A stretch of 64,000 bases of DNA, taken from the IMG/VR virus record IMGVR_UViG_3300001460_000004, positions 166,037 to 230,036 of that record; one strand, written 5' to 3'. Below are positions 7,145 to 21,629 of this stretch, piece after piece (the first letter of the stretch is position 1; each line of letters begins with the position of its first letter). The notes under the pieces were generated by a model. The model worked only from the letters and a program-made list of their open reading frames with translations, was not told where the DNA came from and did not search any database. The position numbers and the translations under genes are program-made.

Positions 7145-7708
7145 ATGGATATTGATATTGACTTTGCAGATCGTAAACATGTTTTAGATAGTCTAAAACA
7201 TGTGCCAGCAAGAATGGACACTGTAAAAGGAGTGCGTAATCACAATAGTGGTGTGTACTTTACTGAAATTCCATATGATAGTAAACATCAATGTGCTAGT
7301 ATTGATTATGAAACTGCCGAAGAACGTGGGTATTTTAAAATTGATTTTTTAAATATGCATGTATACAATTTAATTAAAGATACTAATCATTACACAGCAA
7401 TGCAAAACGCACAAGTACCGTGGGAACGATTATGGGAAGATGTTGAATTTGCTCAACTGTTGGTTCATGTTGGTAATCATACCAACTTGTTGCAATCAAT
7501 GCGTCCGGACAGTATAACTAGAATGGCTGCATTTATAAGTGTAATACGCCCTGGTAAAGCACATTTACAAAATAAACCCTGGGATCAAGTCTTTGACAGT
7601 GTATTTGACGGTGACAACAGCAAAGGGTTTATCTTTAAAAAGAGTCATGCAATCAGTTATGCAGCTTTGGTAGCATTGCATATGAATTTAATCCACTTTG
7701 CGGACTAG
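7145..7708 (+). CDS. Miniature DNA polymerase III alpha (DnaE, family C)-like protein
   Basis: DIDIDF, HNSGVY, GYFKIDFL, IRPG and FKKSHAISYA occur in the same order as DnaE palm/finger motifs. Confidence 0.8.
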   Translation: MDIDIDFADRKHVLDSLKHVPARMDTVKGVRNHNSGVYFTEIPYDSKHQCASIDYETAEERGYFKIDFLNMHVYNLIKDTNHYTAMQNAQVPWERLWEDVEFAQLLVHVGNHTNLLQSMRPDSITRMAAFISVIRPGKAHLQNKPWDQVFDSVFDGDNSKGFIFKKSHAISYAALVALHMNLIHFAD

Positions 7709-8065
7709 CATAATACTACGGCGCCTACCTTTGTTACGTTGTATATTCTTTAAACTACACACAGGACCATGAATTATTTGTAGATGTTTGTTGCTAAAAG
7801 TTTTTAAACAAAACTTAAATGGTTCCCAATCCTTCTTTAAAAACAAGTTTATTGGTATACTTCGATTGCTCTCCCACCACCATTGATGTGCTAATTCTAA
7901 GTATTCTTCCTTGAGTCCTCTTTCGATTACATCACCAAAGTCATATATGCTTGTTAGCGTATCGCCTCGATTTTGTATTACGCCTATGTGTTCATTTCCC
8001 ACATAGTCGACAAGGCTCAAGAAGGGGTAATTTTGGTTTAGTTTGTTAAAGACATTGTTTACCAT
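7688..8065 (-). CDS. Conserved phage hypothetical protein
   Basis: 125-aa ORF filling the gap between convergent and divergent genes. Confidence 0.7.
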   Translation of the reverse strand: MVNNVFNKLNQNYPFLSLVDYVGNEHIGVIQNRGDTLTSIYDFGDVIERGLKEEYLELAHQWWWESNRSIPINLFLKKDWEPFKFCLKTFSNKHLQIIHGPVCSLKNIQRNKGRRRSIMLVRKVD

Positions 8066-11941: not shown

Positions 11942-12795
11942 TATTACCTAAGTTAGTTATTCCCAGTAGAATTAATCAACATTGGATAGAGAGTGGAATG
12001 GACTCGTACGATCTCTGTGTTGACAAAAAACATTTTAAAAAATACCCACACACTGTAAAATATTATTACAACAGCCGTGGTTTTCGTGACCGTGAATGGC
12101 CTAACTCAGTAGATGATTGCATATGGTGTGTTGGTGATAGTTTTACAGTAGGGTTAGGGGTACCACATGAACACAGCTGGAGTTATATACTAGGGGAACG
12201 TTTGAATAAACGCACAATAAATGTTAGCATGGATGGTGCTAGCAACACATGGATACGCAGGCAAGCTGTACAAATACTAGAACTACAACCCAAGTTACTA
12301 ATACTACAATGGAGTTACATCACTAGACGAGAAGCAACTATGGATCAATTGTGGCAAAAGTTCTACGATAGTGTGAGAGATCCAAGTTGGCCAGAATGTA
12401 AAACCTATGCACAAATTTCAGAGTTACCCGAGTGGATAAGAACTGAACTTGAAACAGTGCATAACTGTAGCAATGTTATGGAAAACATCGACGATACTAA
12501 TAAGCGTCTACGTTATACTCATACCAGCGACGAACAAGACAAAGAACATTTATACGATCAAATTACACAAGTTGAAAGTGCAGTAGATTCAACTTTATTA
12601 ATACATAGTTTTGTGCCTCATTTTAGTCCAAATGGATATGCTGTTCCCATTCCTAAAAGTATACAACCAAGACATATACCTGAAATAACTAAATTAGATC
12701 TTGCTCGGGACGGTCATCACTATGATCGGTTAACTGCTGAACATTTTGTTGATCAGTTGGAGAATTTAATAACTGAGAACAGTGCCATTTCCTAA
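11938..12795 (+). CDS. SGNH-like protein with an inserted DPxWPxC module
   Basis: VGDSF, NVSMDGASN, DGHHY. Confidence 0.65.
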   Translation: MILPKLVIPSRINQHWIESGMDSYDLCVDKKHFKKYPHTVKYYYNSRGFRDREWPNSVDDCIWCVGDSFTVGLGVPHEHSWSYILGERLNKRTINVSMDGASNTWIRRQAVQILELQPKLLILQWSYITRREATMDQLWQKFYDSVRDPSWPECKTYAQISELPEWIRTELETVHNCSNVMENIDDTNKRLRYTHTSDEQDKEHLYDQITQVESAVDSTLLIHSFVPHFSPNGYAVPIPKSIQPRHIPEITKLDLARDGHHYDRLTAEHFVDQLENLITENSAIS

Positions 12796-13900
12796 GTTCT
12801 TCGGATTCTTTTACAGCACTATCATCGCTGTTGTATGGCTTACCTATCCCGTTTTCTGCAACCCATTCGTTATACCAACCAGCAACTTCATCAAAGTTTT
12901 TAATCATTAATTTTTTTTCAGCCATAGTTTGTAATTTTATAGGCATTCCGGTTACTAATGCACCACGATCGGTTAGCTCTTTGATTGCTAGAAAACTTTT
13001 GGTGTATGCTTTGCTATTGTTTAACAAGTACTGTTGATCAGTATTGCTTAAACTTTGAATAATACCATTACGAGTGCTAGTATCATCTGGCACACTTAAT
13101 TGAAAGTTTGGTTTGTTACTTTTATCTTCTAACAGCAATGTTGGTTCTACTTGTTTACTAAGTCCACTTATATCTCCCAGCAAGTAATGACATCGATTCC
13201 AGTCTTCAAATTCAATGCCAAATATATCATTCCAGTTACGTTTTTCTTGATGATTAAAGCAAGGTAATTCTAAACAAAATTCTTCAGCTCGAGGCATGTC
13301 TTGCTCGTAAACAAAGTAACTACCAACAGTAAAATATTGATCTACCCACTCTAAGTATTTTGCATAGTCTTGAAGATATTTTATTAAACTCATGCGAGGA
13401 ACTTTAATTTTTATACTGTAAAGGTCTTCGTAGTAATCTGCTTTATCTAATGGGTTGTAAACATTAAGTTTGTCACTGCGGGTTACAATAACCCAACTTA
13501 GTGCATGTTCAAACAAATTTTCTCTTTGGGCACTAATAATATAAAAATGTTCATTTAGATATTTGTAAAATTCAACTTGTTGTGCAATTGGGTCATTGCG
13601 ATTGCGAATATGATATTGTGCTAATCTGCTAGTTTTATAATGATCTACACTGCTTAGTAAATCTGTTATTTCGCTAAGTGTTTGATGATATCCTCTAGGT
13701 TGGTCAATTCTTTCTGGCTTTCCAAGAATTTCACTATTGTATTCTGGGCTAAAGTATCGTATAATACCATTAGTAAGTTCGTGTAAGTTTATTACTGGAC
13801 GATCGTATTTGTGTGCATTCATTAAAATAGTCAGTAATCTTTGCAAAAAAGTACTGCCAACTCGATCTGGAGTTAATATTAATACATTGTTATGGTTCAT
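12689..13900 (-). CDS. Sulfotransferase-like protein
   Basis: N-terminal TPDRVGSTFL resembles the PAPS 5'-phosphosulfate loop; 403 aa. Confidence 0.5.
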   Translation of the reverse strand: MNHNNVLILTPDRVGSTFLQRLLTILMNAHKYDRPVINLHELTNGIIRYFSPEYNSEILGKPERIDQPRGYHQTLSEITDLLSSVDHYKTSRLAQYHIRNRNDPIAQQVEFYKYLNEHFYIISAQRENLFEHALSWVIVTRSDKLNVYNPLDKADYYEDLYSIKIKVPRMSLIKYLQDYAKYLEWVDQYFTVGSYFVYEQDMPRAEEFCLELPCFNHQEKRNWNDIFGIEFEDWNRCHYLLGDISGLSKQVEPTLLLEDKSNKPNFQLSVPDDTSTRNGIIQSLSNTDQQYLLNNSKAYTKSFLAIKELTDRGALVTGMPIKLQTMAEKKLMIKNFDEVAGWYNEWVAENGIGKPYNSDDSAVKESEELRKWHCSQLLNSPTDQQNVQQLTDHSDDRPEQDLI

Positions 13901-13950: not shown

Positions 13951-15213
13951 ATGAGCAAACTATTCCCTGGAAAAGAAATATTCCCTGTTAACTCGCCAAC
14001 TGCTTGTATGTTAAAATGGAGTTGGAGTACAATAAACCTGCAGGATGCATACACTAGTAGTTGTCACCGGGTAGAAGGTGAATATTTTGATATTGAACAA
14101 TTTGATAATTTTCATAACTTACCTGAGAAAATCCTTGCAAGAGAAAAAATGCAACAAGGTATTTGGCCAGGCAAAGGATGCGAGTATTGCGAACGTGTTG
14201 AATGTGCCGGCGGCATCAGTGACAGGACAATGACACTAGAAAGGCAACACACCCGAGATAAAATACCACCTGAGTTGCATGACAACCCCAATGCCACACA
14301 TGTAACACCTACAATACTCGAAGTGTACTTTAATAATACGTGTAATATGAGTTGTGTGTATTGTGCACCAAGTGTAAGTAGTCAAATAAATGCAGAAGTT
14401 ACAAAGAATGGTGGTTTCAGTGTAGGTAACATGCATGTTGAACCTTTTGTTACTAACAACACAAGGCAAAAACTATTAGTAGAAAAACTTTGGAAGTATC
14501 TAAGTACTAACAATCGATATCAACACATACGGCACTTTAATATATTGGGTGGTGAACCATTATTACAACAAGAGTTTGATCAGTGCATACAATTTTGGAA
14601 TGACCATCCCAATCCTAGTTTAACTATTAATTTAGTGAGCAATTTAAACTTTGATCCTAAATTTTTTAAAAACAGAATAAACCAACTGCGCCAGTTAGTT
14701 GATGAATATAAAATATTTCAAGTTGAAATTACTGCAAGTTTAGATTGTTTAGGACCAGAGCAAGAATATGTTCGCCGTGGACTAAAACTACAAGACTATT
14801 GGGTACCAAACTTTGAATTTTTATTACAACAAGATTGGATCAAACCCAGTGTACACAGTTGTATAAGTAGTCTCACAATTAAAACATTTGATCAATTAGT
14901 CAACAAACTTAACAGTTGGAACCACCAATACAATACTACAATAGATCATTCGTTTGATGTAGTAGTGGGGAAAAGTTGGCAAGAAATTGCTATGCATCCT
15001 ATGTTTTTTGGACCTGGCGTATTTGACGAAGATTTTGATCGAATAATTCAAGCTATGCCACAAGGACACAGTCGACAACACATGCAAGGAATTGCTGATA
15101 GTATTCAAGCCGCCCAACGTGATGAAGTTAAAATAAACCAGTTAAAACAGTATTTACGGATACTAGACACTAGAAGAAATACAGATTATACAGAATTATT
15201 TCCTTGGCTTTAG
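13951..15213 (+). CDS. Radical SAM protein with N-terminal twitch-like Cys domain
   Basis: CNMSCVYC, GGEPLL, N-terminal C...SCH...C..C. Confidence 0.88.
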   Translation: MSKLFPGKEIFPVNSPTACMLKWSWSTINLQDAYTSSCHRVEGEYFDIEQFDNFHNLPEKILAREKMQQGIWPGKGCEYCERVECAGGISDRTMTLERQHTRDKIPPELHDNPNATHVTPTILEVYFNNTCNMSCVYCAPSVSSQINAEVTKNGGFSVGNMHVEPFVTNNTRQKLLVEKLWKYLSTNNRYQHIRHFNILGGEPLLQQEFDQCIQFWNDHPNPSLTINLVSNLNFDPKFFKNRINQLRQLVDEYKIFQVEITASLDCLGPEQEYVRRGLKLQDYWVPNFEFLLQQDWIKPSVHSCISSLTIKTFDQLVNKLNSWNHQYNTTIDHSFDVVVGKSWQEIAMHPMFFGPGVFDEDFDRIIQAMPQGHSRQHMQGIADSIQAAQRDEVKINQLKQYLRILDTRRNTDYTELFPWL

Positions 15214-15227
15214 AAGTCATATTACAA

Positions 15228-15233
15228 TAAATA
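15228..15233 (+). promoter_or_regulatory. Late promoter TAAATA
   Basis: Intergenic; followed by SD GAGG and ATG 15258. Confidence 0.55.
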
Positions 15234-15257: not shown

Positions 15258-15515
15258 ATGCAGAGAAAGACTAAAAGCATACTTGAAGAATTAGATAGTA
15301 TCTATAAAGATAAGTATGCCAATATTGACCGCCAACAAACTATTAACAATAGGGCAAATCATGTTATTGCTAGTGCAATTCGTCTTTTAGAAGATTTTGA
15401 AACTCATTATAATGATGAAGATGCTCAAAAATTGCAACGCAAATTGCTCAATGCTATTCGGACCAAAGAACAAACTAAATTTACAAACACAATGAGACGA
15501 GTAAATGTCAAGTAA
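15258..15515 (+). CDS. Hypothetical protein
   Basis: 85-aa ORF with SD. Confidence 0.7.
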   Translation: MQRKTKSILEELDSIYKDKYANIDRQQTINNRANHVIASAIRLLEDFETHYNDEDAQKLQRKLLNAIRTKEQTKFTNTMRRVNVK

Positions 15516-17418
15516 TATTCTTTTAACTGAAGGCGGTAATGTTTTTAAAGACCCTGAGGGCAATATTAAAACTCAGCGTATACAGCTTGCCGACATTGCC
15601 CCCACCATTAAATGGTTAGAAAACTTAACTGGATTACCATTAAGTGTTAACATGTTGGGAAGTACCGGGCAAAAACCTTCTAGTGGTGATTTAGATTTAG
15701 CAGTTGATATTAACAAAGTCAGCAAAGAAGAACTTGACAAGACTCTTACAGATTGGCTTGTAAAGTCTGGCGTTGCTCCAGAAGATGTACATAAAAAACC
15801 CAATGGCTGGGTTATAAAGACTGGCATTAACGTACACTTCCTCACACCTATAGCCGGTAATCCTAAAAATGGTTATGTTCAAACTGATTTTATGTTTTTG
15901 CGTAAACCTGACTGGAGTAAGTTTATACTAACACAGGATCCCAACAGCGAATACAAAGGCGCAAGTCGTAATGTATTGTTAAACAGTATGGCTAAGAGCA
16001 TGGGGTTGAAACTAAATCAAAATGATGGAATTATGTCACGTGAAGATAATAGACTTATTAGTGATGATCCAGATGTTGTTGCAGAACTGTTACTAGGTAA
16101 GCCATACACTGCTCAAGACTTGATGAGTGTTGAAAAAATAATGAAAGCTCTCCAGAGTAATGGTAATCGAGACGCACTTATTGCTGATTGGCTAGCACAT
16201 ATGGAACGTCAAGGTACTCCATATCAAGGTGAAGTAAACGAAGATAACGAAGTAAGTTTAATGGCTAGGTTGCGTGATAGAATTATCAATCAAGGCATGA
16301 GTGTTATTACCGAAAACCCATATAATTTATATGTATTAAAAGAAGGAGCACGTATTGCACATCCTGAGGATCTAATATTTGACTTAGGTGCTGCAGGAGC
16401 AAACGATGCAATGCGGCAATTACAAGCTACTAGCGATAGTCCTACTAGTGCTACAGTTAAATGGGACGGAAAACCTGCAATTATTTTTGGTAGAGACGAA
16501 ACTGGGCAGTTTATACTCACTGATAAGAGTGCATTTGTGGCAACTAAATATGATGGTATAGCAAAATCACCCAAACAGTTAGCACAAATAATGAATATGA
16601 GAAAAGGTGACAGGACTGATTTAAATAAAATGTATGCTAGTATATGGCCAAAAGTAGAAGCTAGTTTACCTCAAAACTTTAGAGGATTTGTAATGGCTGA
16701 CTTGCTATACAGTAATACACCTCCTTTAAAAAATGGAAATTATATTTTTAAACCCAATACTGTAACTTACAGTGTAAATGCAAATAGCGAATTGGGCAAA
16801 CGTATTGCTGACAGTAGTGTAGGATTAGCAGTACACACTTACAAAAAAGGACCAGGTGACAGCGGAAGTCCTATACAAAGTTTAGATATAAATCCAGGTA
16901 CAGGTGTTACCATATTTGGTAGCAAAGATGAAGGTATACAAAGTGCAAAATTAAATAGTGCATTATACAAACAAACAGCCGGCATGATAAAACAACATAC
17001 TTCTGGTATCAACACACTGTTTGCACCAGAGAATTTGAGAAGTAATAAAATAAGCAACTTACCCGAGCTTATGAAACAGTATGTTAATCACAGAGTACGC
17101 AGTGGGGGATTTAAAAACTTGCTCACAGATTTTGCCCCTTGGGTGCGAGCTAAAGCACCGACTAAAAGCGAACGTATACTTAAATGGGCAAATGAAAACG
17201 AAGCTGCATTCGTAGCCGTATTTGAGATATTTTTAAAGATAACCCAACTCAAAAATGATTTAGTTGCACAGTTTGATAAACAAACAAAAGACGTACAAGC
17301 AAGCTATGATACTGGTGATCGTGGCCATGAAGGGTATGTAGCAAACGATTTAAAATTTGTAGATCGTTTTAAATTTAGTAGAGCAAACTTTGCACAAAAT
17401 AATCCTGACTTAACATGA
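15505..17418 (+). CDS. Two-domain putative internal head protein: Pol-beta-type nucleotidyltransferase plus ATP-dependent ligase-like domain
   Basis: LGSTG...SGDLD and QTDF; KWDG, EGYV and LKFV; LTE|G and LKE|G precede the two domains. Confidence 0.6.
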   Translation: MSSNILLTEGGNVFKDPEGNIKTQRIQLADIAPTIKWLENLTGLPLSVNMLGSTGQKPSSGDLDLAVDINKVSKEELDKTLTDWLVKSGVAPEDVHKKPNGWVIKTGINVHFLTPIAGNPKNGYVQTDFMFLRKPDWSKFILTQDPNSEYKGASRNVLLNSMAKSMGLKLNQNDGIMSREDNRLISDDPDVVAELLLGKPYTAQDLMSVEKIMKALQSNGNRDALIADWLAHMERQGTPYQGEVNEDNEVSLMARLRDRIINQGMSVITENPYNLYVLKEGARIAHPEDLIFDLGAAGANDAMRQLQATSDSPTSATVKWDGKPAIIFGRDETGQFILTDKSAFVATKYDGIAKSPKQLAQIMNMRKGDRTDLNKMYASIWPKVEASLPQNFRGFVMADLLYSNTPPLKNGNYIFKPNTVTYSVNANSELGKRIADSSVGLAVHTYKKGPGDSGSPIQSLDINPGTGVTIFGSKDEGIQSAKLNSALYKQTAGMIKQHTSGINTLFAPENLRSNKISNLPELMKQYVNHRVRSGGFKNLLTDFAPWVRAKAPTKSERILKWANENEAAFVAVFEIFLKITQLKNDLVAQFDKQTKDVQASYDTGDRGHEGYVANDLKFVDRFKFSRANFAQNNPDLT

Positions 17419-18029
17419 TACAATTAGACCGTAGCAGTCTTATTTTAACAACATATCGTACTGGAAGTACAGCCCTGTGTTCGCAACTGCAAGATAGTGG
17501 ATACCACAATCACGACGAAGCATTTACGTGGGGTAAAAATGCATTTGATTTTACAGAAGCTGTTAGGAATATTGATTACAAATTTGTTGTTAAAGTTATG
17601 CCTGATCAACTCAACGATAGCATTATTGCATATCTTAATAGGTTAATTAAAACAAATCATGTACAAGTAATTAGACTATATCGACGAGATATTGTTGCAC
17701 AAATTGCTAGCATTTATATTGCAAAAAAAACAAAAAATTGGCATGTTACTGATAGAGAAGATACAACTCAACAACAGATTGCAATTGATGATCGATTCTT
17801 AGCAGAAACAGTACACAACATGTTATCAATGTCATATAACTTAACACAATTGCCTATAGGTATTGATACACAATTAGTTTATGAAGATTTAGATTTATCT
17901 AACAGTCAGTACAAAGTAAATCCAAAACCCAATAACTACAATACAATATTAGATAAAATTCAAACAATTATACATAATAATACAGATTTAACCAATCAAT
18001 ACAGTACATTTTACAGTTGGTATGAATAA
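17415..18029 (+). CDS. Sulfotransferase-like protein (Stf0-like)
   Basis: TTYRTGSTAL, LYRRD..AQIAS, VYEDL. Confidence 0.6.
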   Translation: MIQLDRSSLILTTYRTGSTALCSQLQDSGYHNHDEAFTWGKNAFDFTEAVRNIDYKFVVKVMPDQLNDSIIAYLNRLIKTNHVQVIRLYRRDIVAQIASIYIAKKTKNWHVTDREDTTQQQIAIDDRFLAETVHNMLSMSYNLTQLPIGIDTQLVYEDLDLSNSQYKVNPKPNNYNTILDKIQTIIHNNTDLTNQYSTFYSWYE

Positions 18030-18098: not shown

Positions 18099-18566
18099 AT
18101 GGCAGTTTTTAACCCGTTTAACGGTGATGCACAACCGGTAATGAACACAGACGTTCATAACGGATCACAATCAGGTGCAATTTCATCAGCAGCATTGGTC
18201 CAAATGGACGGACCAAATCTAGACTTTTTTGGACTAACAGTTCAAAACAGTGGTAACACAGACCAAGACCTACGCAGTGAGCTAGGACTTTACAGTAGTG
18301 CAGTGTTTGATCCAGGCATTTTTGTACAAATTTTGCAAGCAATTCAAACTAAAGGCACAGTTGCTAAGTACCAAGTTGAAGCATCAGCTGGTGGAGAAGC
18401 ATCTTTTGCTGTATATCCACAAGGCGCATGGACACAAGCTACACTACAAGCAGCTATCCAGGCACTGGGTACAGTTACAGTAACTAAATCAGATGGCACA
18501 ACACGTACAGTTGACGTATCTGGTTCAGACGTAACTGACACAGGATTTAAACTAGCAGCAGCATAA
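18099..18566 (+). CDS. Putative virion structural protein
   Basis: A/G/T/S-rich; late promoter, strong SD and its own terminator. Confidence 0.6.
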   Translation: MAVFNPFNGDAQPVMNTDVHNGSQSGAISSAALVQMDGPNLDFFGLTVQNSGNTDQDLRSELGLYSSAVFDPGIFVQILQAIQTKGTVAKYQVEASAGGEASFAVYPQGAWTQATLQAAIQALGTVTVTKSDGTTRTVDVSGSDVTDTGFKLAAA

Positions 18567-18587: not shown

Positions 18588-18618
18588 AAAGGCTCAGTTT
18601 TTACTGGGCCTTTTTTTT
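18588..18618 (+). terminator. Rho-independent terminator
   Basis: AAAGGCTCAG-TTTTTA-CTGGGCC followed by T8. Confidence 0.85.
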
Positions 18619-19794: not shown

Positions 19795-20661
19795 ATGAAA
19801 TTACACGAGTTAGATAACCCATCGCGTGTTGCAAACATTTCAAAAGTATTTGAATCACAGTATGGTGTGCCATTCAATGCAGAAAAACTTTCAACAAACA
19901 GCGCCAGGGCGTTACTTAAAAAAGTTCGTAAAACATTAGGTGAGCAACGTTCGCTAACTTCGTTTTACACTAGTCAAAACAATCCTAGTTATCTTAAACT
20001 AGTAATAATGGAACAAGCATTAGAACAGCACATTGACGAGGACGAAGGTCTTCCAATTGACATGAATGATCCAAAATTAAAACAAACCATGGACAAAGCC
20101 AAGCGTGGTTCCCAACTTAGTCCCGAAGAACAAAAAACTATGACAGCCGTTGCACTTGCACAAGGTGTTAAGAAAGAAAGTTCACATAGACAAAAACGCA
20201 TGGTTAAAGAAGGTGAAATGCAAGAAGCCCAGGTGGTACTTGCAGCACAGGATTTTGTTGATCGTATCCAAGACATGATTGAAGATGTTAGCTCAATGCA
20301 ATATAAAGATTTACCTGCATTAGTTGATACTATACGTGCTGATATTGGTGCTGATCAAGCTGCGGCATTTAACACTGCCTCCATTAACGGTCTTACAAGT
20401 TTGCTAGATTGTTTGCAAACCAGTAAAGTTGACCTTGAAGCTGCACAGTCTACTCTAACTGGTGATGATGTTATTATCCCAGGTGCCGAAGATGTTGCAC
20501 CAGATGTAGATGCTGAAGTAGATGCACTTGACATTGATGCAGAAGAAATTGATGTTGACGTTGATACTGACGGAGATGTTGCAGATATGGATGACACCGA
20601 AACAGTTGATGTTGATATTGACATTGACGATGTACAAGACGTTGGTAGAGAACGGAGGTAA
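19795..20661 (+). CDS. Putative prohead core/scaffold-like protein with acidic tail
   Basis: MKLHEL N-terminus, helical core, D/V/I-rich C-terminus. Confidence 0.5.
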   Translation: MKLHELDNPSRVANISKVFESQYGVPFNAEKLSTNSARALLKKVRKTLGEQRSLTSFYTSQNNPSYLKLVIMEQALEQHIDEDEGLPIDMNDPKLKQTMDKAKRGSQLSPEEQKTMTAVALAQGVKKESSHRQKRMVKEGEMQEAQVVLAAQDFVDRIQDMIEDVSSMQYKDLPALVDTIRADIGADQAAAFNTASINGLTSLLDCLQTSKVDLEAAQSTLTGDDVIIPGAEDVAPDVDAEVDALDIDAEEIDVDVDTDGDVADMDDTETVDVDIDIDDVQDVGRERR

Positions 20662-21011: not shown

Positions 21012-21629
21012 ATGTTTCAAAAATATCAGCTTACCCCAACTAACTTAGAACACGATTATCTTTGGTATAATAACAATTGCGGATGGGTAAGTGTTCCTAA
21101 AAATGCAAATATGATGATTCGTAATATTTGCGAACATTTCAACATGGATTATAAATTAAAATCTGTAGCAGAACGTCCTGTTGAAATGTTTTGTGTTGTA
21201 CGCAATCCATGGCTGCGTTTTGTAAGTGGCATGGCGGAGTGCTTGTATCGACGGCACAACGGAACTACTCGCACAAGTATGAATGAGTTGCTGTTAGCAA
21301 TAGATCAATTTTACGAAGAGCCACATTTGTTTGATGAACATTTAGAACCGCAAATTGCATATGTACACGGGTATACTTTTACTAAAATTGTAAAATTTGA
21401 AAACTTACTAAATGACTTATTAAAAGTTGAGTATTTAAACAAGGACAAATACTTAGTAGCAAGATATACAAACCCTAGTTTAACACAAGTGAGTAAATAC
21501 TTTAACAGTATACATCAAGTTGTCAAACAACATGAATTATTAATTAATAAAGTAATTGAAAAGTATTATGCACGTGATTATGAAATATGGCTTTGCCCGC
21601 CAGAATACGAAAACAAACTTATAACTTAA
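21012..21629 (+). CDS. Sulfotransferase family 2 protein
   Basis: VPKNAN and VVRNPWLRFVS 3'-phosphate-binding motif. Confidence 0.7.
   Translation: MFQKYQLTPTNLEHDYLWYNNNCGWVSVPKNANMMIRNICEHFNMDYKLKSVAERPVEMFCVVRNPWLRFVSGMAECLYRRHNGTTRTSMNELLLAIDQFYEEPHLFDEHLEPQIAYVHGYTFTKIVKFENLLNDLLKVEYLNKDKYLVARYTNPSLTQVSKYFNSIHQVVKQHELLINKVIEKYYARDYEIWLCPPEYENKLIT

What the first reader, a model, noticed from the sequence alone, without database searches (positions are those of the whole stretch)
15505..17418. Putative virion-delivered polyprotein joining a Pol-beta nucleotidyltransferase to an RNA-ligase-like domain
Seen: the N-half has GS-x7-GDLD plus a distal Asp (QTDF), the Pol-beta NTase signature. 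The C-half has KWDG, EGYV and LKFV, matching motifs I, IV and V of ATP-dependent ligases/capping enzymes, with no OB domain evident. Each half is preceded by an L-x-E|G site (LTE|GG, LKE|GA), and the gene is in a late-promoter unit. Known: T4-type prohead proteases cut after (I/L)-x-E in internal head proteins. Inference: two nucleotidyl-transfer enzymes are packaged, released by cleavage and injected, possibly for RNA/tRNA end repair, DNA-end protection, or AMPylation of host defence proteins at the moment of infection.
Basis: partly seen in the sequence, partly recalled or inferred. Interest (0 to 1): 0.75.

Follow-up and report, generated by a model that had tools for sequence, protein, structure and literature searches.

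The report
Phage PolX–ligase repair protein, probably capsid-packaged
A late-expressed gene of a T4-related jumbo phage joins a minimal family-X DNA polymerase to an RNA-ligase-like enzyme, each preceded by a conserved prohead-protease-type cut site, so the phage probably carries a gap-filling and nick-sealing kit in its capsid, as African swine fever virus does.

Summary
The N half is a true family-X polymerase core: palm plus thumb, Z 10.3 to human Pol beta, with a conserved Asp triad. The C half (Pfam DUF6267) has the adenylyltransferase fold of ATP-dependent ligases, closest to RNA ligases. Its KxDG lysine and EG motif are invariant, it carries a helical insert, and it has no OB domain.

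The two modules are shuffled across thousands of phage proteins: alone, in either order, as adjacent genes, or fused to other enzymes. Nearly every module starts after (L/I)-x-E.

Cleavage and packaging are not shown for this phage, but several lines support them:
- a sense-oriented ATAAATA element upstream;
- a gp21-family protease in the genome;
- cut-site motifs in low-confidence segments of the models;
- T4 capsid-targeting-like leaders on stand-alone C proteins;
- a PolX-module homologue, PA5oct gp253, marked as detected by mass spectrometry in the PA5oct record.

Against: the cyanophage homologue (T4-GC71, core to 16 cyanomyoviruses) has no proteomic mark in the virion proteome table.

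The likeliest role is gap filling and nick sealing of incoming nucleic acid. AMPylation is not supported.

The parts
15227..15233 (+). ATAAATA, a T4-type late-promoter-like element (context CAATAAATAC), 31 nt upstream of the 85-aa ORF
   Evidence: The heptamer is depleted in the window (18 vs 36 +/- 6), yet lies in sense orientation within 80 nt upstream of 33 of 240 ORFs of the contig. That the element marks late genes is inferred from T4 knowledge.
15258..15515 (+). 85-aa ORF whose end overlaps the target's start codon by 11 nt, so probably co-transcribed. It is a homologue of a small protein annotated 'virion structural protein' in PA5oct and 121Q.
   Evidence: phrog_11854, E 7e-15. tblastn finds 62 jumbo-phage records. 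The same primase-helicase-small protein order is seen.
15505..17418 (+). Target ORF, 637 aa: leader, PolX-like module, conserved linker helix, ligase-like module
15505..15531 (+). N-terminal leader MSSNILLTE (residues 1-9), ending in the putative protease site LTE|GG
   Evidence: Mean pLDDT is 55 for residues 1-10 against 94 for 11-20. P3 is L/I in 189/195 modules. T4 Alt starts MELITE, and a 7-residue Alt propeptide is reported in PMC9026906.
15532..16134 (+). Family-X polymerase-like palm+thumb core (residues 10-210). Catalytic Asp codons: D62 at 15688-15690, D64 at 15694-15696, D128 at 15886-15888.
   Evidence: AF2 pLDDT 91. Foldseek PDB hits at E<=1e-3 number 62, and all 50 listed are PolX, Pol lambda or Pol beta. 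VIA Z 10.3, rmsd 3.0 A over 164 residues to human Pol beta 102/139-335. Conservation.
16252..16314 (+). Conserved linker helix (A-R-L-R-D-R-I-x-N-Q-G-M motif) ending in VITE|N, the position that carries the I-x-E|G site in most homologues
   Evidence: Column conservation is 75-94% across 55 N-C proteins. pLDDT is 56-71. The same helix heads some stand-alone C proteins.
16336..16344 (+). LKE (residues 278-280), the second putative protease site, cutting before G281
   Evidence: Residues 271-280 all have pLDDT <50 in the C-module model. Glu is 78% and the following Gly 78% conserved.
16345..17415 (+). Ligase-like adenylyltransferase module (DUF6267), residues 281-637. Key codons: K319 (motif I) at 16459-16461, E609 at 17329-17331, K617 at 17353-17355. 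Helical insert at about residues 485-593 (16957-17283). No OB domain.
   Evidence: Pfam DUF6267, 1.1e-43. AF2 pLDDT 94.6. The VIA-wide top 13 of 48,161 chains are all RNA/DNA ligases, led by NgrRnl at Z 6.9. All top 50 are ligases. Invariant residues.
17415..18029 (+). 204-aa sulfotransferase-like ORF overlapping the target's stop by 4 nt, in the same putative transcription unit
   Evidence: Pfam Sulphotransf (Stf0), 6e-7
18099..18566 (+). 155-aa ORF of unknown function, last gene before the terminator. An ORF of similar size (156 aa) follows the target in a related contig.
18588..18613 (+). Intrinsic-terminator-like hairpin (11-bp stem followed by a T run), the probable end of the unit

Best explanation
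The gene encodes two nucleic-acid repair enzymes on one chain.

Shown:
- Residues 10-210 form a minimal family-X DNA polymerase, palm plus thumb only, like the ASFV Pol X architecture. The Asp triad is intact.
- Residues 281-637 form a covalent nucleotidyltransferase (ligase) domain of the RNA-ligase type. Its KxDG lysine is invariant, a helical domain is inserted before motif IV, and there is no OB domain.
- The two modules are independent units in nature: alone, in either order, as adjacent genes, or fused to other enzymes.

Inferred:
- The gene is transcribed late from an ATAAATA promoter, together with a small protein annotated as a virion protein.
- The chain is taken into the prohead and cut by the phage's gp21-family protease after the conserved (L/I)-x-E sites: LTE|GG at the N terminus, and VITE|N and/or LKE|GA in the linker.
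- The released polymerase and ligase travel in the capsid and enter the cell with the DNA.
- There they fill gaps and seal nicks in the incoming genome, or in another duplex nucleic acid, before phage genes are expressed. This would be the phage counterpart of the Pol X plus ligase that ASFV packages.
For: Domain identity: N module; C module; conservation.

An intein-like insert (33.9 bits, below Pfam's 35.8-bit gathering cut-off) sits directly after KWDG in one homologue, which points to a functionally important site.

Modularity.

Late unit.

Protease and sites:
- An S77 protease and a gp23 homologue are in the genome.
- The major capsid protein starts with two LLE|G sites.
- The motif is 97-98% conserved with a variable middle residue.
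- It lies in segments with low pLDDT.
- A conserved h-x-R-E tail follows C modules only when another module comes after them.

Packaging:
- PA5oct gp253 is marked 'structural protein; ESI-MS/MS' in its record and is an N-module homologue: hhalign probability 99%, E 6e-18; profile search E 3.5e-20. The PA5oct virion proteome is described in PMC7318152.
- 9 of 46 stand-alone C proteins begin with a leader like the T4 IPII/IPIII capsid targeting sequence, against 1/239 and 8/961 background ORFs (CTS facts in PMC9026906).
- The cytidylyltransferase that lies next to the cyanophage homologue, and is fused to N-C in some metagenome proteins, was detected in S-SM1 virions (PMC3037559).

Precedents: ASFV packages late-expressed Pol X, ligase and AP endonuclease (PMC12172490). 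A PolX-ligase fusion performs base excision repair in PgV-16T (PMC5537341).
Against: - No proteomic or cleavage data exist for this phage or for any full N-C protein.
- The residues right after the N-terminal site (G-G-N-V/I-F) are themselves over 90% conserved and well ordered. The preceding L-x-E could therefore be part of the fold rather than a cut site.
- PA5oct gp253 starts directly at the GGN-equivalent position with no leader, so packaging there does not need the motif.
- Cyanophage C-only proteins lack the motif. T4-GC71 carries no proteomic mark in the table covering the S-SM1, S-PM2 and Syn9 virion proteomes.
- The gene keeps a conserved place just downstream of primase and replicative helicase, which also fits a cytoplasmic replication or repair role.
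- Structural matches of the C module are individually modest: Z about 7, best Foldseek E 0.04.
- The substrate (DNA, RNA or hybrid) and the cofactor are unknown.
Confidence: 0.45

Rival explanations
1. The protein is a cytoplasmic replication or repair enzyme that is never packaged. The PolX-ligase fusion fills and seals gaps (base excision repair, Okazaki-fragment or concatemer repair before packaging). The (L/I)-x-E residues are simply the first structural element or linker of each domain.
For: - Synteny with primase and DnaB-like helicase holds in the window and in relatives. It also holds downstream of gp41 and MazG in cyanophages.
- The complete Syn9 and P-RSM6 genomes have no PF01068 or PF01653 ligase but do carry DUF6267. 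The literature notes that cyanomyoviruses lack g30 (PMC2984593).
- T4-GC71 has no proteomic mark in the cyanophage virion proteome table.
- The PgV PolX-ligase fusion acts in base excision repair (PMC5537341).
- E-G-G-N-x-F is conserved as a block.
Against: - A late-promoter-like element precedes the gene, and the co-transcribed neighbour is annotated as a virion protein.
- All 5 related jumbo-phage records tested already carry a canonical ATP-dependent DNA ligase, so it is not their sole ligase.
- The N-module homologue is marked as detected by ESI-MS/MS in the PA5oct record.
- Homologues carry CTS-like leaders.
- The linker motif lies in a segment predicted disordered.
Confidence: 0.3
2. The protein is an RNA repair or counter-defence kit. 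The ligase module reseals tRNAs or other RNAs cut by host nucleases, as T4 Rnl1 does with Pnkp. The PolX-like module restores missing 3' nucleotides. Partner modules such as 2H/Acb1, HAD/NT5C and HIGH-type nucleotidyltransferases heal ends or counter nucleotide-based immunity. This could hold with or without packaging.
For: - RNA ligases (NgrRnl, T4 Rnl2, REL1, Trl1, T4 Rnl1, Rnl3) rank above DNA ligases in both structure searches and in the language-model search.
- There is no OB domain.
- The modules are fused to Acb1, Tad3, NT5C, cytidylyltransferase-like and amidoligase domains.
- Relatives already have a DNA ligase.
Against: - The N module matches template-dependent family-X DNA polymerases, including the thumb, and not CCA-adding or poly(A) enzymes.
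- No polynucleotide kinase module was seen among the fusion partners.
- The score differences between RNA and DNA ligases are small (Z 5-7).
Confidence: 0.15
3. The protein is a nucleotide-signalling or protein-AMPylation effector. One or both nucleotidyltransferases modify host defence proteins or immune nucleotides rather than repair polynucleotides.
For: Only the fusion context with the anti-CBASS domain Acb1 and the anti-Thoeris domain Tad3 in distant homologues.
Against: Both folds match polynucleotide enzymes with their catalytic motifs intact. Only one cGAS-like protein appeared among the hits (rank 6, probability 0.05), and no Fic or other protein-AMPylating NTase appeared.
Confidence: 0.05

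Closest known systems
African swine fever virus Pol X (pO174L) with its DNA ligase (pNP419L), packaged in the virion
   Same: Both have a minimal family-X polymerase with palm and thumb only, paired with a ligase. The ASFV enzymes are expressed late and carried in the particle, and are thought to repair the genome before replication (PMC12172490). This is the mechanism proposed here.
   Different: The ASFV enzymes are separate proteins in a eukaryotic virus, and its ligase is a canonical ATP-dependent DNA ligase with an OB domain. Here the two are one chain in a phage, with an RNA-ligase-type DUF6267 module, and packaging is not yet shown.
Phaeocystis globosa virus 16T PolX-ligase fusion (PgVPolX)
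   Same: [quoted passage not shown] Gap filling and nick sealing were demonstrated for base excision repair (PMC5537341).
   Different: The PgV ligase part is NAD+-dependent-ligase-like, and the enzyme also has dRP/AP lyase activity. The protein here lacks the 8-kDa lyase and fingers domains and has an unrelated ligase module.
T4 internal head proteins and Alt (capsid targeting sequence plus gp21 processing)
   Same: Both have short N-terminal leaders ending in (L/I)-x-E that are removed by the prohead protease. In T4 the cargo is ejected with the DNA, and Alt is an enzyme with a 7-residue propeptide (PMC9026906; leader sequences).
   Different: No homology beyond the leaders. The internal site would make this a two-cargo polyprotein, which is not described for T4. 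The target's own leader is only loosely CTS-like.
ATP-dependent RNA ligases: Naegleria NgrRnl (Rnl5), T4 Rnl2, T. brucei REL1
   Same: The adenylyltransferase fold is the best structural match. Motif I KxDG and the EGYV-type motif IV are shared, and neither has a DNA-ligase OB domain or motif VI.
   Different: Sequence identity is only 8-13% and Z is 6-7. A helical insert of about 110 residues sits between the core and motif IV. An N-terminal H-x-E-D motif is invariant. No activity is known.
Bacterial LigD (polymerase + phosphoesterase + ligase), from my own knowledge
   Same: One protein combines an end-filling polymerase with a ligase for break repair.
   Different: The LigD polymerase is of the primase type (AEP), not family X, and its ligase has an OB domain.

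Membership tests
Family X DNA polymerases (Pol beta / Pol lambda / bacterial PolX / ASFV Pol X) | Palm plus thumb fold of Pol beta | tested here: met
   Foldseek PDB gives 62 hits at E<=1e-3, and all 50 listed are family X (best 5e-5, probability 1.00). VIA Z 10.3, rmsd 3.0 A over 164 residues to human Pol beta 102/139-335.
Family X DNA polymerases | Catalytic Asp triad with the G-S...G-D-x-D motif | tested here: met
   G52-S53, D62, D64 and D128 are present. D64 is invariant and D62, D128 and G52 are at least 90% conserved in 96 sequences. Equivalence to Pol beta D190/D192/D256 was not checked residue by residue.
Family X DNA polymerases | 8-kDa dRP-lyase domain and helix-hairpin-helix fingers domain | tested here: not met
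   Only about 14 residues precede the palm, and the structural alignment starts at Pol beta residue ~102/139. The same minimal layout is known in ASFV Pol X (my own knowledge), so this does not exclude family membership.
Family X DNA polymerases | Template-directed nucleotide addition | not testable with these tools
   Needs an enzyme assay.
Covalent nucleotidyltransferases (ATP/NAD-dependent ligases, capping enzymes) | Adenylyltransferase (NTase) fold | tested here: met
   In the search that does not rely on Foldseek, the top 13 of 48,161 chains are all RNA/DNA ligases, with Z 6.9-5.2 and 160-192 residues aligned. All top 50 are ligases. Individual scores are modest.
Covalent nucleotidyltransferases | Motif I K-x-D-G with the nucleophilic lysine | tested here: met
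   K319, D321 and G322 are invariant in 121 sequences. An intein-like insert (33.9 bits, below Pfam's 35.8-bit gathering cut-off) lies directly after KWDG in P0163.
Covalent nucleotidyltransferases | Motifs III, IIIa, IV and V | tested here: inconclusive
   E609-G610 are invariant, and K617 and R621 at least 90% conserved, which fits motifs IV and V. Motifs III and IIIa could not be assigned: the candidates are the conserved T-D-K at 339-341 and D-L-L-Y at 399-402. No residue-level superposition was available.
DNA ligases / capping enzymes specifically | C-terminal OB domain with motif VI | tested here: not met
   The protein ends 18 residues after K617. The model shows only the core plus a helical insert. 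It is therefore filed with the RNA-ligase-like group, not with DNA ligases.
Covalent nucleotidyltransferases | Self-adenylylation and strand joining | not testable with these tools
   Needs an assay with labelled ATP or NAD+.
Pfam DUF6267 | Match above the gathering score | tested here: met
   150.5 bits against a cut-off of 27, covering residues 284-631.
T4-type packaged, gp21-processed head proteins | The phage encodes a gp21-family (S77) prohead protease | tested here: met
   PF03420 match at 92 bits at contig position 99817, next to the gp23 homologue.
T4-type packaged, gp21-processed head proteins | (L/I)-x-E site after a short N-terminal leader that resembles a capsid targeting sequence | tested here: inconclusive
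   The site is present and conserved. The target's own leader MSSNILLTE resembles Alt's MELITE more than the IPIII CTS. Clear CTS-like leaders occur in 9/46 stand-alone C homologues.
T4-type packaged, gp21-processed head proteins | Physical presence of the processed protein in virions | not testable with these tools
   The evidence is only by homology. PA5oct gp253 (N module) is marked ESI-MS/MS in its record. Cyanophage T4-GC71 (C module) has no proteomic mark.

The most novel reading that the evidence does not exclude
T4-superfamily marine and jumbo phages load their capsids with a modular kit of nucleotide-handling enzymes: a minimal PolX, a DUF6267 RNA-ligase-like enzyme, a HIGH-type nucleotidyltransferase and, in some lineages, Acb1- or Tad3-like anti-defence domains. 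These are made as polyproteins or leader-tagged proteins, cut by the prohead protease at (L/I)-x-E, and injected with the DNA. The same DUF6267 family (T4-GC71) is a core gene of all 16 compared cyanomyoviruses. It would then be the long-sought ligase-type enzyme of phages said to lack one.
Probability: 0.3. Interest if true: 0.85.

Novelty: new variant of a known kind. Interest (0 to 1): 0.72.

Why it matters
Three consequences follow if this holds.
1. It gives a testable function to DUF6267 / T4-GC71. This family has thousands of members and is core to all 16 cyanomyoviruses in the 2010 comparison. Those phages have no recognised DNA ligase.
2. It identifies a family-X polymerase in tailed phages that no Pfam model covers. 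A 2022 review of phage DNA polymerases lists only the ASFV enzyme as a viral family-X example. One member, PA5oct gp253, is already marked as detected in a cultured phage's virion.
3. If the cleavage and packaging inference holds, it extends the T4 capsid-targeting idea from small internal proteins and Alt to multi-enzyme polyproteins. It would also show convergence with ASFV, which carries its own Pol X and ligase in the particle.

Tried and rejected
- Sequence searches of the whole protein and of both module profiles against PDB chains found nothing meaningful. NCBIfam gave nothing. Pfam has no model for the N module.
- I asked whether PA5oct gp258 and gp257 are diverged N and C modules. They are ESI-MS/MS-marked proteins of matching size, placed right after the small protein. 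hhalign shows no relation. The real PA5oct homologue turned out to be gp253. PA5oct has no C module, and 121Q has neither module.
- I asked whether Syn9 gp182, gp184 or gp185 hide an N module. They do not.
- I considered that DUF6267 is simply the replicative ligase of this lineage. I rejected this for the jumbo phages, because 5 of 5 related records carry a PF01068 ligase. It stays open for cyanophages. The window's own 230-kb contig shows no canonical ligase, but it is only 66% complete.
- ORFs of this genome are not generally enriched for (L/I)-x-E-[GAS] near their N termini: 6 in the first 16 residues against 3-7 in control windows.
- Not every module boundary has a strict (L/I)-x-E-[GAS] site. 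Several C-to-cytidylyltransferase junctions show only V-x-R-E.
- No papers mention DUF6267.
Full report
OBSERVATION. The window is the last 64 kb of a 230-kb IMG/VR virus contig judged 66% complete. That contig encodes a T4 gp21-family prohead protease and a gp23-type capsid protein, so the phage belongs to the T4 superfamily. Gene order and the small upstream protein tie it to the PA5oct / 121Q / RaK2-like jumbo phages.

FAMILY AND MODULARITY.
- Pfam sees only DUF6267, on residues 284-631. PHROGs gives a family of unknown function. PDB sequence searches give nothing.
- More than 3,800 metagenomic proteins match, and about 615-640-aa full-length relatives are common.
- I mapped the two halves onto the 150 best hits of an exhaustive search of 50%-identity cluster representatives. 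The halves behave as independent modules: 62 C only, 49 N-C, 29 N only, 6 C-N, and 4 with a split or repeated module match.
- Sixty of the 150 carry at least 130 further residues. These include cytidylyltransferase-like (HIGH-motif), DUF5661, amidoligase, NT5C, Tad3 and Acb1 domains, and an intein-like insert.
- In one contig the N and C modules are adjacent overlapping genes in the same place, after helicase and a small ORF.

THE N MODULE.
- AlphaFold2 on a 96-sequence alignment gives pLDDT 91.
- Foldseek against the PDB gives 62 hits at E<=1e-3. The 50 listed are all family-X polymerases: Thermus PolX at 5e-5, Pol lambda and Pol beta.
- VIA-align gives Z 10.3 and rmsd 3.0 A over 164 residues to human Pol beta residues 102/139-335, which is palm plus thumb up to the C terminus.
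- The ESM Atlas structure search also lists Pol-beta palm and thumb clusters.
- D64 is invariant, and D62 and D128 are at least 90% conserved.
- There is no 8-kDa domain and no fingers domain. This is the minimal architecture known from ASFV Pol X (my own knowledge).
- No Pfam model covers this module.

THE C MODULE.
- The model has pLDDT 94.6.
- Foldseek E-values are weak (best 0.04), but ligases fill the lists.
- VIA-align on Foldseek's top 1000 puts only ATP-dependent RNA and DNA ligases in its top 50.
- The search of 48,161 representatives that does not use Foldseek puts ligases in the first 13 places: NgrRnl Z 6.9, T4 Rnl2 6.0, REL1 6.0, Trl1 5.8, T4 Rnl1 5.5, then DNA ligases near 5.
- K319, D321, G322 (motif I), E609 and G610 (motif IV) are invariant. 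K617 and R621 are at least 90% conserved.
- One homologue has an intein-like insert directly after KWDG, scoring 33.9 bits, just below Pfam's 35.8-bit gathering cut-off.
- A helical insert of about 110 residues precedes motif IV, and the chain ends 18 residues after K617, so there is no OB domain.
The N half can be named more precisely as a family-X polymerase core.

THE PUTATIVE CUT SITES.
- In 195 N modules the residue two before the Glu is L or I in 189, while the middle residue varies freely.
- In 206 of 209 C modules a hydrophobic-x-E lies just upstream of the R-I-x-H-x-E-D anchor.
- In most N-C proteins the junction reads ...RLRDRIVNQGM-x-x-I-x-E|G-x-R-I-x-H. The window's protein has a 10-residue insertion and so has two candidate sites, VITE|N and LKE|G.
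- The junction residues 271-280 all have pLDDT below 50, and residues 1-10 average 55. A strongly conserved short motif in a low-confidence segment suggests a linear signal rather than a structural element.
- When a C module is followed by another module, its tail is extended by a conserved A-N-R-x-V-x-R-E.
- In P0226 an I-N-E|G lies two residues before the Tad3 domain.
- The capsid protein of this phage begins with two L-L-E|G sites.
- Caveats: G-G-N-V/I-F after the first site is itself over 90% conserved. Some junctions lack a strict site.

EVIDENCE ON PACKAGING.
For:
1. ATAAATA is depleted in the window, 18 copies against 36 +/- 6 in shuffles. Yet it lies in sense orientation within 80 nt upstream of 33 of 240 ORFs of the contig, several of them over 1,100 aa long. 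One copy lies 31 nt before the 85-aa ORF that overlaps the target. A strong terminator-like hairpin follows at 18588-18613. By analogy with the T4 late promoter TATAAATA (my own knowledge), this is a late unit.
2. The 85-aa ORF is homologous to a protein annotated 'virion structural protein' in PA5oct and 121Q. In those phages the genes after primase and helicase are largely annotated virion proteins, marked ESI-MS/MS in the PA5oct record.
3. PA5oct gp253 (237 aa, note 'structural protein; ESI-MS/MS') is a true homologue of the N module. tblastn gives E 6e-5, hhalign gives probability 99.0% and E 5.9e-18 over 187 columns, and the profile search gives E 3.5e-20. The G-S...G-D-I-D and Q-V-D motifs are intact. 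PMC7318152 reports 93 gene products identified by ESI-MS/MS of purified PA5oct particles.
4. Nine of 46 stand-alone C proteins begin with M-[KR]-x(2-3)-[ED]-[LFIV]-[LIFV]-x-E-[SAGE], for example M-K-I-I-E-L-L-T-E|A. Background ORFs show this in 1/239 and 8/961. T4 IPII and IPIII begin M-K-T-Y-Q-E-F-I-A-E|A, and Alt begins M-E-L-I-T-E. PMC9026906 states that these ten residues suffice for capsid targeting and that Alt loses a 7-residue propeptide. My pattern was written after seeing the data, and the proteins are related, so the enrichment is suggestive rather than a formal test.
5. In cyanophages the DUF6267 gene (T4-GC71, present in all 16 genomes compared) is followed by a cytidylyltransferase (T4-GC190) that was detected in S-SM1 virions. 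The same kind of domain is fused behind N-C in some metagenome proteins (PMC3037559).

Against:
- T4-GC71 itself has no proteomic mark in that table, and the cyanophage proteins lack the leader.
- PA5oct gp253 starts directly at the GGN-equivalent position.

FUNCTION.
- The closest working analogues are ASFV and the PgV-16T fusion. ASFV packages late-expressed Pol X, ligase and AP endonuclease, presumably to repair its DNA before replication (PMC12172490). The PgV-16T PolX-ligase fusion fills and seals single-nucleotide gaps (PMC5537341).
- The best structural matches of the C module are NgrRnl, T4 Rnl2 and REL1. To my knowledge these three seal nicks in duplexes.
- I therefore favour gap filling plus nick sealing on a duplex substrate.
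- It is not the only ligase of this lineage: all five related jumbo records tested carry a canonical ATP-dependent DNA ligase, although none is seen in the window's incomplete contig.
- In cyanomyoviruses it is the only ligase-like gene. Syn9 and P-RSM6 have no PF01068 or PF01653 match, and the field has noted the missing g30 (PMC2984593).
- RNA or tRNA repair remains a live alternative, given the RNA-ligase-like fold and the Acb1 (2H), NT5C and Tad3 partners.
- Protein AMPylation has no support.

VERDICT.
- Observation: confirmed.
- Domain interpretation: supported and sharpened.
- Late expression: supported by motif statistics.
- Cleavage and capsid delivery: plausible, with one piece of experimental support by homology, but unproven.
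- Kind: a new variant of known kinds (PolX-ligase repair pair; T4-style leader-directed packaging), in a very large uncharacterised phage family.

Noticed in passing
whole contig G000; in the window at 8064, 15227, 19739, 31317, 50096, 55493, 59198 (+): ATAAATA behaves as a promoter element. It is depleted overall (18 vs 36 expected in the window; 51 copies in 230 kb), yet sits in sense orientation 11-80 nt upstream of 33 ORFs, often as N-ATAAATA-C/A.
   Followed up: partly
PA5oct NC_071039.1 153120-153833 (locus L100:3899-4612): PA5oct gp253 is annotated only as 'structural protein (ESI-MS/MS)'. It is a family-X-polymerase-like protein with an intact Asp motif. A polymerase-like enzyme in a jumbo-phage virion appears to have gone unremarked.
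   Followed up: yes
Cyanophage loci L005 (Syn9 gp183-gp185) and L001 (P-RSM6): T4-GC71, a hypothetical protein found in all 16 cyanomyoviruses compared in 2010, is the DUF6267 ligase-like family. It always lies next to the virion-detected cytidylyltransferase T4-GC190, downstream of gp41 and MazG. Syn9 and P-RSM6 have no canonical DNA ligase.
   Followed up: partly
protein P0163 (metagenome homologue), residues ~322-424: An intein-like sequence starts with Cys immediately after the KWDG motif of the ligase module. The Pfam Intein_splicing match has E 3e-8 but scores just under the gathering cut-off. The ORF runs off its contig.
   Followed up: partly
G000:C1:101523-102722 (outside the window): The gp23-type major capsid protein starts M-S-Q-D-L-L-E|G...A-L-L-E|G. 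These are two gp21-type sites within 20 residues, implying a much shorter propeptide than T4's 65 residues.
   Followed up: no
window 12689-13900 (-), 13951-15213, 17415-18029, 21012-21629; also 5-901: A cluster of sulfotransferase-like and radical-SAM genes is interleaved with the replication genes and the genes annotated as virion proteins. A radical-SAM gene and, at one locus, a sulfotransferase recur in related contigs, along with NifU and Fe-S assembly genes. This may be a glycan or nucleic-acid modification pathway.
   Followed up: no
window 19795-20661 (+): A 288-aa protein matches a 'virion structural protein' PHROG and has an extremely acidic C-terminal tail rich in D, E, V and I. It has its own upstream ATAAATA.
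   Followed up: no
related virus records G001-G005 (loci L091-L095): All five related jumbo-phage records carry a gp30-like ATP-dependent DNA ligase. It lies about 17 kb from the PolX-ligase gene in the 316-kb record and 12-26 kb away in the others. The window's own contig shows none in 230 kb.
   Followed up: partly
proteins P0226, P0265, P0147, P0251 (metagenome homologues): The PolX-like or ligase-like modules occur in 750-1300-aa ORFs together with Tad3 (anti-Thoeris), Acb1 (anti-CBASS), NT5C, amidoligase and DUF5661 domains. The architecture resembles the 'polyvalent proteins' described for phages and conjugative elements (my own knowledge).
   Followed up: partly
window 7145-7708 (+): A 187-aa ORF matches a 'DNA polymerase' PHROG at E 8e-50. 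121Q has a gene annotated DNA polymerase in the same relative position, which suggests a split or accessory polymerase subunit.
   Followed up: no
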